From Polymyxa betae A26-41 (lineage: Eukaryota; Protista; Endomyxa: Phytomyxea): a stretch of DNA of 32,481 bases. The notes below the pieces were generated by a model that was given only the letters and a program-made list of their open reading frames with translations, was not told the DNA's origin and did no database searches. Below are positions 1,521-4,960 of the stretch, piece after piece. The translations under genes and the position numbers were made by a program. Numbering within the stretch: position 1 is the first letter of the stretch; each line of letters begins with the position of its first letter. The stretch covers positions 1-32,481 of the forward strand of contig RBZT01000315.1 of NCBI GenBank assembly GCA_003693705.1, in the 5' to 3' direction.

Positions 1521-2769
1521 TTTCTCCATTCCGAATAATACAATCCCGAGAAACGTGATTGACGCGGGGAACGTCGGCTGTATGCGGATCAAAGGGAGAA
1601 TTCAGCGGAGTACTCGGGAACTTGAGGCTTATTCCAGTAGTCTTCAGAGGGTGATGAAGAAATATGCGAATCGGCGGAGACGCGATTAACGCGGGCACCA
1701 GTCGTGCTGATCCCGCTGGAGAAAGCGGTACCAGAGGCAGAATGGGACGAGTTCCCTGACGGAGACAGTAAGGGAGGCCGCGCCGAGGCCATGGAGGCAT
1801 GCGTAGGCGATGTAAAAGACCGATGCTGAGCAGTGCCCAGAGATGGGGTCACCGGAGCGGGGCCTGCGGATGAAGGTCCGGATCTCGAGCCCGGAGAAGA
1901 GACTGTAGAGCGGATGCGCGCAGTGAAATCACTCATAAGGCGCGCGGCCTCGTCCGGGATACAAGACGGGCAATCCCTGACGTGATGAGACTCCTTGCAG
2001 TGGAACAGCGTAACTGACGCGGTTCCCGGACAACAGGCGACGTAGACGGCCGAGTCGTGCCAAAGTGTGAAATCGCAGGAGGTGTCTCAGAGGTCGGGAC
2101 AGGATTAAAAATACGGAAGCTTCTTAGCGTCTCAATCCAAGTTTAGGCGGTTGCGGAGAGAGTTACGCAAAACTTCCGGATGCACAGCAGAACAACAGCG
2201 TCAATCTGTTTTGTCCGAAGGTCTGAGTGCGCCTCGAAGAGAGACGCCAGCCCATAGGAATCGATGATTGAGCGACACTGACCGAAAATGTCATGGACCG
2301 CATTGGATCATCATAATGAACAAAACGAAGAGATTTGAACAGCTGTTTGGAATCAACCCGTACAGCAACAGCTCCATCAACTTGCGACTTCAGAGATGAA
2401 TTTGCAGTTCATCATCAGGAACTACCGTATATTACGGCTGCTTATACCCCCAAGATGTACAAAGAGAGGCCACGGCTAGTATGGAAGGCGTATATACTGC
2501 TGATAATTTTGCCGAGGCAATTCAACTGCTCGAAATAAGCACGATTACGGCCTTCTTCGTTTCGAGACGAGTCGATCTATATATAGATTGTTATAAGTGG
2601 GGTAGAGTGTGGCGGCACCAAATGCTCTCGAAAGTCCTGTGGGCGTCGGGCGCCGTTAACGGGCGACTCTGTCCCGCTTAACAGGGCCATATGTAATGCC
2701 GACACCCTCGTTCGGCCAAGGTCGGTTGTGCGTCCGCCGTTTCGGCCTCATTCTGACTTTCGTGCCACC

Positions 2770-4074
2770 ATGGCTCGGGGAAAGATTCGCTAAACGATGG
2801 CTCAGAAGCTGCGAATTGTGCAGCAAGCGTATTCTGCCCCGTCCAGTACCAAGCGAACTGCTCGCGAATACAAGATACAGCCAACTCAGATTCGTAAATT
2901 AAAGCAAACGCAGGCTTCAATCAACGACAGCTAAATGGGCCGTTTCGTTAACCGCCCGGAGGGGAGCCAAGCCCAGCTACCTGATGTTTATTCTCATTTA
3001 ACCGAATTCTCTGATCAAATGAGATCGTAAGACCGGCCAGTTTCAGTCTCCATGTTGTGCCGGGAGGCTAAAGGTACCAACCACTGAACTGGTTTAGCAT
3101 GTTCTAATCGGTATCCAGATTCAGCGCCGAATTCGCTGCTGTAAACGACATGGCAGCCCGCCAGAGAATCTACCGCTTTGTCGCTCGAGAAACGATTGTC
3201 CAGCGCAGACGTACACACGTGGCCCAGAATACTCACCACTGCTCCATAATCATTGATGATTTCGTCAATTGTGTGAATGAGCACATCGACACAATGAAGG
3301 TACGTTATAAACCTGTATTATACCATGTCGTTGCTAAACCTTTGTTTTTGTCAGGTGAAGGCCTGCGCCTTTGTACTATTGACGAGACGAACGTCGATTT
3401 CGACTTGCCATCAACAATAACTCTCAGTCGTCGGGGAGAGCGTTCTGTCGGAATTGTCGGAAGTGGTAACAGCCAGCGGGCGACAGTTCTGCTTGGAGTT
3501 TCGCTATCTGGGGAGAAGTTGCCGCCGTTTATTGTCTTTGCTGGCAGGCTAAATGGGCGTGTTATCAGGGTGGTGACCGGTGACGTCGTCGGTCGCGGTA
3601 TCCAGCCGAAGTCGTCATGAGCGCTCAACCAAAAGCGTGAATCGATGAGCAGCTAATGTTGGAGTGGGTGGAGAGGGTTTGGCAGCCATGGATCATGCAG
3701 CGCCATCATCCGTATTCAATCTTGGTTATGGATAACTATAAGGCTAACCATATTTTTTGTTATTAACGACATTGCAACGCATGTATTTACAGGTTCATGT
3801 GATGTCGTCGGTTGTTAACAGACTCGCTGCTTTGGGAACCCATTCTGAATTCTTTGTCCCCGGCTATACGTCAAAGCTGCAAGTCCTCGATGTCGGAATC
3901 AATCGCCCGTTTAAAATATATATCGCCAACGAATTCACCGAGCACATGGTCCACAGCAATAACAGGCCGACACGGGCTATCGTCGCTCAATGGACTAAGA
4001 AGTCATCGGAGGCAATCATCATCGAAACCATCCTCAATACGTCGAGACATATAGGGATAAGATCCCACTTTTAG
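2770..4074 (+). pseudogene. pogo-type DD35D transposase (HTH + CENP-B-like HTH + DDE_1), inactivated
   Basis: N-terminal HTH TMAQKLRIVQQAY...TAREYKIQPTQIRK, then RPVSVSMLCREAK, QRRRTHVAQ, catalytic region TIDETNVDFD, RATVLLGVSLSGEKLPPFIVFAG and LVMDNYK|intron 3743-3792|VH...PGYTSKLQVLDVGINRPFK. There are 35 residues between the last two Asp after splicing. Several in-frame stops and frameshifts. Confidence 0.92.
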
Positions 4075-4083
4075 ATTACAGTT

Positions 4084-4521
4084 TTATTCCAAAATTGTAA
4101 TTTCATCCAATAAAACACATATAGCCATTCCAGAATTGCGATGGTTCAACTGTCTCTTGTGAGAGCTTTCACTGAGCGCGTACATTAAAACAACTTGTGC
4201 CTCCGATTGACGAAACTGTATTCAAGGCGAACGACACTACGGGGAAGGAACCCGACTCGACATCCTTCATTTCCGGCGTTGATAACATGCGCCGCAAACG
4301 CCTCTTCTGGAATGTTGTCGGGCCCTTGAACAAAACGTAGTGATTATGGCAAAACAATAGATGTGACGATATTTAAAGGATTGCTTACCATCAACGACAG
4401 CGAGTTTAAATCTCAATAGCGACCCTATTCCGACCTGCTCACCACAAACATCATGACGTTCACAACTGCGACCTTTCGATGATGCTGCTAGCCCGACGAC
4501 GAAAAGATCACCCACAGCCAT
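4084..4521 (-). pseudogene. Transposon-borne small protein, HIRAN-like with CxxHxxC cluster (one intron, one frameshift)
   Basis: Exon 1 is 4521-4389, a GTAAG...AG intron is 4388-4325, and exon 2 starts at 4324. Product: MAVGDLFVVGLAASSKGRSCERHDVCGEQVGIGSLLRFKLAVVDGPDNIPEEAFAAHVINAGNEGCRVGFLPRSVVRLEYSFVNR, frameshift near 4200, AQVVLMYALSESSHKRQLNHRNSGMAICVLLDEITILE*. The HIRAN call rests on the A.AV/H...VGFLPR motif only. Confidence 0.7.
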
Positions 4522-4960
4522 GATCAGTTAGCGATCAGATTATTGGGATGGCGATCGAGAGCTTCGATTACAGGCTCGAAAACTGCGCTCACGGATGTAC
4601 GAAAAATGGGTATGTATTGCCAAGGGGTTTATAAAGGCGTAAAATACGGTACTGAAACCTTCTTTTCGGCAAGTCCCATCTCATACACGCATAAAGTATA
4701 TTGGAGCGATGGTTCAATGCAATCGCGCATTGGGACGGCCGAATATTGGACCGAAGTCTCATTGGAAAGAGACGAATTAAGACGAGCAACGTCGGACTTG
4801 TACTGACTCCAGTCTTGAAGAAACGAGATGATAGACAGCCGATCATAAATAGAAAGCTTTAGTGGGGTGACGAGAGAAAACTGGAAAGGATTCATGTTGA
4901 GTAAAACAACAAAATTCACTGCTGAGTAATAAAAAGGAAAAACTCAAAAGACTGAAGTGA

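What the first reader, a model, noticed from the sequence alone, without database searches (positions are those of the whole stretch)
2425..4649. Two-gene pogo-type transposon: DD35D transposase plus a convergent HIRAN-like/Cys-His accessory gene
Seen: within the TIRs and TA duplication there is a second, spliced gene (4521-4084, - strand, ~123 aa) whose stop lies 9 nt from the transposase stop. It is invisible in the ORF track because of a 64-nt intron and one frameshift. The product has GRSCERHDVCG (CxxHxxC) and EEAFAAHVINAGNEGCRVGFLPR. Known: pogo/Fot/Tc2 elements normally encode only a transposase, and HIRAN domains (Rad5/HLTF) carry an A.AV...VG[YF]LPR-type motif and bind free 3'-OH DNA ends. 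Inference: this may be an undescribed two-component cut-and-paste family in which a HIRAN-like, possibly Zn-binding, helper binds cleaved 3'-OH ends or steers integration to stalled forks. The tight tail-to-tail packing argues for a dedicated element gene rather than a recently captured host fragment. I recall similar small uncharacterised proteins in diatom proteomes, but this is unverified.
Basis: partly seen in the sequence, partly recalled or inferred. Interest (0 to 1): 0.88.

Follow-up and report, generated by a model that had tools for sequence, protein, structure and literature searches.

The report
Two-gene pogo transposon with HIRAN-fold helper
A widespread lineage of cut-and-paste jumping genes in single-celled eukaryotes carries, facing its transposase, a second small gene that has evolved in lockstep with it and is predicted to fold like the HIRAN DNA-binding domain of replication-fork repair proteins, although transposons of this kind are described as needing only one protein.

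Summary
Confirmed and widened. Window 2425-4649 is a decayed Passer-type pogo transposon (TA duplication, CCGTA-starting ~26-bp TIRs, DD35D), almost certainly in Polymyxa betae. Its convergent second gene (4521-4084, one intron, one frameshift) is real. The protein family has 705 clusters at 50% identity, no Pfam match, and near-invariant CxxHxxC plus a fourth Cys. A convergent DDE_1 transposase lies beside it in 42 of 47 testable metagenome loci and all five further diatom-type loci; 3 of 3 outside and 11 of 12 own-genome transposase-first loci carry it. Twenty-five elements show both genes inside paired TIRs. The two gene trees match (25 of 38 splits; shuffles at most 2), and dN/dS (0.05-0.15) equals the transposase's. 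Two AlphaFold models (pLDDT 92-93) match only HIRAN structures (Z 5.6-8.0, next 4.3). HLTF's 3'-OH pocket residues do not appear conserved, so 3'-OH binding is unsupported. Best reading: a trans-acting DNA-binding cofactor of transposition (about 50%). No description was found in the paper library; Repbase could not be checked. First-stage readers noted the same pair on other contigs of this genome, unchecked. RNA confirmation was unavailable.

The parts
2423..2424 (.). Left TA target-site duplication
2425..2452 (+). Left TIR (CCGTA start, ends in a C-run, followed by an ATGTAC-like motif seen at the transposase end of most relatives)
2770..4074 (+). Decayed Passer-like DD35D transposase gene: N-terminal HTH region plus DDE_1; at least 4 internal stops and 1 frameshift; start codon inferred
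   Evidence: intact relatives
3074..3118 (+). Probable transposase intron 1 (GT...AG), inferred from sequence and a gap in the homologue alignment only
   Evidence: inference
3300..3354 (+). Transposase intron (GT...AG), an insertion relative to intronless homologues
3381..3891 (+). Catalytic triad: D at 3381, D at 3731, D at 3889; 35 residues between the last two
3743..3792 (+). Transposase intron with GC donor and AG acceptor
4084..4324 (-). Accessory gene exon 2: fourth conserved Cys (4262-4260), VGFLPR motif, C-terminal basic helix; one-base frameshift near 4202-4201; stop 4086-4084
4325..4388 (-). Accessory gene intron, 64 nt, GT...AG; same position as unrelated GT...AG inserts in other own-genome subfamilies, absent from L072/L064 and from most outside homologues
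4389..4521 (-). Accessory gene exon 1: ATG 4521, VVGL strand and CxxHxxC (4464-4444)
4622..4649 (-). Right TIR
4650..4651 (.). Right TA target-site duplication

Best explanation
The element is a dead copy of a protist lineage of Passer-type pogo transposons that stably encodes two proteins. SHOWN: the DD35D transposase and a ~120-aa protein sit tail to tail inside TIRs, move together into TA sites, co-diverge, and are under equal purifying selection. PREDICTED: the small protein has a HIRAN beta-barrel with an added CxxHxxC...C site and a conserved basic patch. INFERRED: the transposase excises and integrates as in any pogo element; the small protein acts in trans as a zinc-stabilised, structure-selective DNA-binding cofactor that recognises single-stranded or branched DNA (replication forks, gaps, or the broken donor site) and so steers integration or donor repair to where a cut-and-paste element gains copies, in the manner of Tn7 TnsE. 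It probably does not use the HLTF dinucleotide/3'-OH pocket.
For: Linkage: 42/47 metagenome loci, 5/5 diatom-type loci, 17 own-genome loci besides the window; transposase-first 3/3 outside and 11/12 inside the genome. Inside paired TIRs in 25 elements, TA on both sides in 22. Trees: 25/38 shared splits versus shuffled mean 0.2, max 2; 14/15 well-supported accessory splits recur; Mantel rho 0.89. dN/dS in diverged sister pairs 0.05, 0.10, 0.11, 0.15 versus 0.09, 0.10, 0.14, 0.21 for the transposase. Fold: top three VIA matches are lp_0118, HLTF HIRAN and Rad5 for both models (Z 7.8/6.8/5.6 and 8.0/7.0/6.0; next 4.3 and 4.0); Atlas TM 0.57 to a PF08797 cluster. Four ligands kept together in 124/129 sequences; conserved basic residues R19, R73, R104, K106. 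HIRAN domains of HLTF and Rad5 bind DNA, Rad5's preferring ssDNA and overhangs without needing the 3'-OH (PMC4666394, PMC7804152). Trans action fits ~406-bp derivatives lacking the gene at four different TA sites.
Against: No function was tested. Z scores of 6-8 and Foldseek E-values of 0.05-0.1 are moderate, and there is no sequence-level HIRAN match (1 of 129 members at E 0.12; none; no PDB hit). HLTF pocket residues appear lost (register by motif, partly from memory). Median net charge is 0. Single-gene Passer elements are highly active without any helper (PMC9976928), and the transposases here keep their own HTH domains. Equal selection fits any role needed for spread, including regulation or anti-silencing. 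Expression was not shown.
Confidence: 0.5

Rival explanations
1. The small protein is a regulator or assembly factor: it binds the subterminal repeats of the TIR motif or the transposase itself, and controls expression, nuclear import or transpososome assembly, like the Myb/SANT partner of PIF/Harbinger or TnpA of En/Spm.
For: Same linkage, co-phylogeny and selection data. The accessory-side end repeats the TIR core motif in many elements. Loss of the HLTF pocket and neutral net charge suit a protein-binding or sequence-reading role. Two-protein eukaryotic transposons usually use the second protein this way (own knowledge).
Against: TIR internal sequences differ widely between families while the small protein stays highly conserved, which suits a sequence-independent ligand; the transposase has its own HTH domains for TIR binding.
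Confidence: 0.25
2. It is an anti-silencing or anti-defence factor, like VANC of VANDAL Mutator elements, that keeps the element expressed against host methylation or small RNA.
For: Retention of an intact accessory gene in a deletion derivative that lost the catalytic domain (L072); convergent transcription could itself generate antisense RNA; long C-terminal tails in the diatom group.
Against: Anti-silencing proteins tend to be host-lineage specific and fast-evolving (own knowledge); this one is as conserved as the transposase across Rhizaria, diatoms and unknown protists.
Confidence: 0.15
3. The fold call is wrong or incidental: the protein is a metal-binding barrel of another kind (for example related to LON substrate-binding/PUA-like domains) with a role unrelated to DNA.
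For: ESM feature search of P0006 gave plant clusters partly annotated LON_substr_bdg at 0.91 with 169 shared features; Z below about 8 can reflect a common arrangement.
Against: All chains with Z >= 5 are HIRAN in two independent models; PUA/ASCH-like chains reach only Z about 3; the VGL, AI-V and GFLPR motifs fall on the strands expected for HIRAN.
Confidence: 0.07
4. It is a captured host gene carried passively or for host benefit.
For: A few loci lack a detectable transposase downstream (5 of 47).
Against: No single-copy host version was seen; linkage, orientation, matching trees and matching dN/dS exclude passive carriage; the host's own Rad5/HLTF-like HIRAN gene is a separate, unrelated locus.
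Confidence: 0.03

Closest known systems
Passer (PS) family of the pogo superfamily (PMC7386202, PMC9976928)
   Same: DD35D DDE_1 transposase with BrkDBD/HTH_Tnp_Tc5-type DNA-binding region, TIRs under 30 bp starting CCGTA, TA duplication, 1.8-3.5 kb.
   Different: Passer is described with a single ORF; listed hosts are animals and oomycetes. This lineage has a second, convergent, co-evolving gene and occurs in plasmodiophorids, diatoms and unidentified aquatic eukaryotes. Placement inside Passer by a tree with reference sequences was not done.
HIRAN domain (PF08797; HLTF, Rad5, Lactobacillus lp_0118)
   Same: Predicted six-stranded barrel; the only structures with Z >= 5; similar VGL, AI-V and G(F/Y/H)LP motifs; stand-alone like bacterial HIRANs.
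   Different: No HMM match; inserted NGRSCxxHxxC segment and fourth Cys; long beta-hairpin where HLTF has the N90-N91-Y93 loop; no conserved Tyr clamp; extra C-terminal basic helix; encoded by a transposon.
Ciliate multi-ORF Tc1/mariner elements: TBE, Tec, Sardine/Thon/Anchois (PMC4724952, PMC3464196, PMC7325037)
   Same: ITm transposons with extra conserved ORFs of unknown function; the TBE 22-kD ORF is on the opposite strand and under purifying selection.
   Different: DD34E/DD35E Tc1/IS630-type transposases, 3-4 ORFs, ciliate-restricted, extra ORFs of about 190-210 aa. Homology to the present protein was not testable (no sequences in hand).
Tn7 TnsE target selector (PMC10293859)
   Same: Functional analogy only: a replication-fork DNA-binding fold (PriB-like) co-opted by a cut-and-paste transposon as a structure-specific target selector.
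   Different: Bacterial, unrelated fold, works through the TnsC ATPase, which has no counterpart here.
PIF/Harbinger Myb/SANT partner, MuDR MURB, En/Spm TnpA, VANDAL VANC (own knowledge)
   Same: Eukaryotic two-protein DNA transposons, often with convergent genes.
   Different: Other superfamilies, other folds and target duplications.

Membership tests
Passer (pogo) | DD35D catalytic triad in a DDE_1 domain | tested here: met
   Window exon-wise count; D exactly 36 residues before the third D in 27 of 29 scorable full-length relatives; PF03184
Passer (pogo) | Short TIRs (<30-40 bp) beginning CCGTA | tested here: met
   25 elements with paired ~26-bp arms; motif matches Table S1 of PMC7386202
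Passer (pogo) | TA target-site duplication | tested here: met
   TA/TA in 22 of 25 paired elements, different flanks among copies of one family
Passer (pogo) | BrkDBD and/or HTH_Tnp_Tc5 DNA-binding motifs | tested here: met
   BrkDBD over cut-off in P0339, HTH_Tnp_Tc5 over cut-off in P0385, weaker in others; CENP-B_N also scores
Passer (pogo) | Single ORF | tested here: not met
   Second conserved gene in nearly all loci; Passer described as single-ORF
Passer (pogo) | Falls inside the Passer clade of a transposase tree with reference elements | not testable with these tools
   Reference sequences in the paper supplement are cut short; no named references were returned by the protein search
HIRAN domain | PF08797 profile match | tested here: not met
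   1 of 129 members at E 0.12; 0 of 101 among the 25 families shown
HIRAN domain | Six-stranded HIRAN beta-barrel fold | tested here: met
   Predicted models only: Z 5.6-8.0, rmsd 2.6-3.6 A over 84-94 residues, clear gap to unrelated folds; Foldseek probability 0.9-0.98 but E 0.05-0.1
HIRAN domain (HLTF type) | Pocket residues Y72, N90/N91, Y93, H110 for the 3'-terminal dinucleotide | tested here: not met
   Columns after VGL are variable (top residue <= 33%); loop before AI-V has D/N 52%, G 66%, E 78%, no aromatic; H110 position is F 91%. Register by motif, HLTF numbering from PMC4666394 plus memory; no coordinates were available
HIRAN domain | Binds ssDNA or branched DNA | not testable with these tools
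   needs a binding assay
Zinc-binding protein | Four conserved Cys/His ligands meeting at one site | tested here: inconclusive
   C21, H24, C27, C66 kept together in 124 of 129 sequences; their spatial clustering could not be measured, as model coordinates are not returned
Fot/Fot-like (pogo) | TAA/TAAA duplication, 40-60 bp TIRs, HTH_psq | tested here: not met
   TA duplication, ~26-bp TIRs, no HTH_psq

The most novel reading that the evidence does not exclude
A eukaryotic Tc1/mariner/pogo-group transposon lineage has co-opted a HIRAN-fold domain from the replication-fork repair toolkit as a dedicated second transposition protein that selects targets or donor sites by DNA structure, making it a eukaryotic counterpart of Tn7 TnsE and a possible handle for steering Passer-type vectors.
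Probability: 0.3. Interest if true: 0.9.

Novelty: new variant of a known kind. Interest (0 to 1): 0.76.

Why it matters
Pogo and mariner elements are the textbook one-protein transposons, and Passer is now used as a gene-transfer vector. A deep, widespread branch that has kept a second protein under the same selection as its transposase shows an unrecognised step in the life cycle of these elements. It also assigns a large orphan family (at least 705 clusters, annotated only as hypothetical in diatoms and plasmodiophorids) to a transposon. If the HIRAN fold retains fork or ssDNA binding, it bears on the old question of how cut-and-paste elements couple to replication to gain copies, and intact natural copies in a culturable diatom make that directly testable.

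Tried and rejected
No DNA-level copy of the window element exists in the assembly, so no family consensus or within-family dN/dS was possible; relatives were compared at protein and codon level. Pfam, PDB-sequence and ESM-feature searches gave no HIRAN match. No relatives in viral contigs, bacterial/archaeal genomes or phages at the tools' sensitivity. An attempt to get a HIRAN sequence alignment through the host Rad5-like gene failed, so pocket mapping is by motif. The L150 TIR pair is spurious and was dropped; L083-L085 and L148/L149 are near-duplicates. Rejected: chance ORF, in-frame read-through of the intron as the true gene (loses the fourth Cys and GFLPR), recent host-gene capture, Fot membership, tight stop-to-stop packing as a family trait.

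Full report
Host and setting. The window is contig C923 of a 27,085,814-base, 1001-contig eukaryotic assembly. The Polymyxa betae draft has 1,001 contigs and 27,085,946 bp (PMC6328671), and the best database hit of the accessory protein is from Spongospora subterranea, so the host is almost certainly this plasmodiophorid.

The observation. The element runs 2425-4649 between TA dinucleotides, with arms identical at 20 of 28 positions. An intact metagenomic transposase aligns along 2794-4059 at 28-41% identity, piece by piece. The catalytic aspartates lie at 3381, 3731 and 3889, and with the intron 3743-3792 excluded there are 35 residues between the last two. The gene carries at least four stops and a frameshift. 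On the minus strand, intact intronless homologues align to exon 1 (4521-4389), skip the 64-nt GT...AG intron, align to 4324-4203, and continue in another frame from about 4200 to the stop at 4086-4084, nine bases from the transposase stop. Other subfamilies in the genome have unrelated GT...AG inserts at the same position and one subfamily has none, which supports the intron. RNA evidence could not be obtained.

It is a family, inside the TIRs. No DNA-level copy exists, but the accessory profile hits 26 contigs. Seventeen fetched loci besides the window show the same tail-to-tail pair. Starting from the transposase, 11 of 12 loci with a C-terminus and room downstream carry the gene; the exception is the most distant match. 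At least eleven stronger DDE_1 loci of other pogo families have no accessory hit on their contigs, so the gene is confined to one lineage. An intact intronless copy (L072) found 705 clusters at 50% identity. Of 47 outside loci with at least 500 bp downstream, 42 have a convergent DDE_1 transposase, as do all five loci of the diatom-type subgroup, including Fragilaria crotonensis. Three transposases chosen first, at 34-44% identity to the query, all had the gene. Twenty-five elements of 1.1-3.5 kb show paired ~26-bp CCGTA arms around both genes, 22 with TA on both sides, and copies of one family have different flanks. Nothing was found in prokaryotes, phages or viral contigs.

It evolves with the transposase. 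For 43 pairs, the two trees share 25 of 38 splits against at most 2 in 1000 shuffles, 14 of 15 well-supported accessory splits recur, and patristic distances correlate at rho 0.89. Some rows are near-duplicates, but the deep splits also match. Polymyxa elements fall in three separate branches, one next to the diatom group, so the pairing is older than those branches or has been passed between hosts as a unit; the trees are unrooted and do not decide this. In diverged sister pairs dN/dS is 0.05-0.15 for the accessory and 0.09-0.21 for the transposase; among close, decaying copies within Polymyxa both rise to 0.2-1.0. That is the usual pattern of a gene selected when an element founds a new family and neutral afterwards (inference from established transposon biology).

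The protein. C21, H24, C27 and C66 are kept together in 124 of 129 sequences, with conserved G11, G18, R19, F70, R73, Y95, R104 and G112. No Pfam family or solved sequence matches. AlphaFold models of the Polymyxa and Fragilaria proteins are confident (pLDDT 93 and 92). Among 48,161 chains the only three with Z >= 5 are, both times, Lactobacillus lp_0118, HLTF HIRAN and Rad5 (Z 7.8/6.8/5.6 and 8.0/7.0/6.0), with the next at 4.3 and 4.0; Foldseek ranks HIRAN chains first but with E 0.05-0.1; the Atlas gives TM 0.57 to a PF08797 cluster and 0.67 to an unnamed diatom cluster. I rate the HIRAN fold about 0.8 likely. HLTF clamps a terminal dinucleotide between Y72 and Y93 and needs N90/N91 (PMC4666394). 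By motif register these positions are variable here, the first is replaced by the Cys/His insert and the second loop by a long hairpin (the register rests partly on memory of the HLTF sequence). Rad5 HIRAN also lacks most of those residues and binds ssDNA and overhangs without 3'-OH preference (PMC7804152). DNA binding is therefore plausible, 3'-OH reading is not supported, and zinc binding is likely but unmeasured. An ESM-feature hit to LON_substr_bdg-like plant clusters is unexplained and not backed by the fold searches.

Mechanism. Shown: co-transposition, co-evolution, equal constraint. Predicted: fold. Inferred: function. The transposase keeps its own HTH domains, so the small protein does not replace TIR binding. 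About 406-bp derivatives without the gene sit at four different TA sites, so it is not needed in cis. TIR interiors differ widely while the protein is conserved, which points to a sequence-independent ligand. I favour a structure-selective DNA-binding cofactor acting at the target or at the broken donor site (0.5), analogous to TnsE, whose PriB-like fold was probably taken from the fork machinery (PMC10293859). Rivals are a regulator or assembly factor (0.25), anti-silencing (0.15), a wrong fold call (0.07) and passive cargo (0.03).

Comparison with what is known. TA duplication, short CCGTA TIRs, DD35D and Brk/Tc5-type HTH match Passer (PMC7386202), but Passer is described as single-ORF (PMC9976928), and no reference tree could be made, so I call it Passer-like. 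Extra conserved ORFs are known in ciliate Tc1-type elements (PMC7325037, PMC4724952, PMC3464196), which lowers the surprise; those have other transposases and longer ORFs, and homology was not testable. No paper in the library holds pogo, transposon and HIRAN together, and related searches found no description. First-stage notes on other contigs of this genome describe the same pair; they are not independent support.

Verdict. A real, apparently undescribed two-gene variant of Passer-type pogo transposons with a new HIRAN-fold, Cys/His protein family. Architecture is well established; function is open and directly testable. Interest 0.76.

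Noticed in passing
L072:3201-4327 (G000:C503): 1123-bp deletion derivative with perfect TIRs that keeps an intact intronless accessory ORF but only the 5' end of the transposase.
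   Followed up: partly
L069, L070, L074, L076: About 406-bp MITE-like derivatives of the L064/L072 family at four different sites, 94-96% identical, holding only the first part of the accessory gene.
   Followed up: partly
flanks of 22 elements: Target preference beyond TA: A at -4 (31/45), C at -3 (27/45), G at -6 (23/45), strongest as GTAC|TA|GTAC in the lake and diatom groups.
   Followed up: partly
accessory-side ends, e.g. L061, L068, L144: The core of the TIR is repeated one or more times just inside the accessory-side end, while the transposase-side end is followed by an AATGT(A/G)CA-like motif in most families.
   Followed up: no
P0099, P0143, P0115, P0050, P0019: Some family members carry long low-complexity N- or C-terminal extensions (up to 425 aa) with no Pfam match.
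   Followed up: no
L065:689-1669 (-): A PIF/Harbinger-like DDE ORF (by motif only) lies next to one copy of the element.
   Followed up: no
L117: One metagenome locus has transposase fragments upstream on the same strand as the accessory gene, the only non-convergent arrangement seen; it may be an adjacent second copy.
   Followed up: no
window:15926-17158 (+): Host TYW3 methyltransferase with a TYW2 N-terminal domain.
   Followed up: no
window:20708-21157 (+): Host cyclin gene fragment.
   Followed up: no
L143 (G000:C846:58020-58298): The host's own Rad5/HLTF-like gene has a weak PF08797 match and shows no sequence similarity to the transposon protein.
   Followed up: partly
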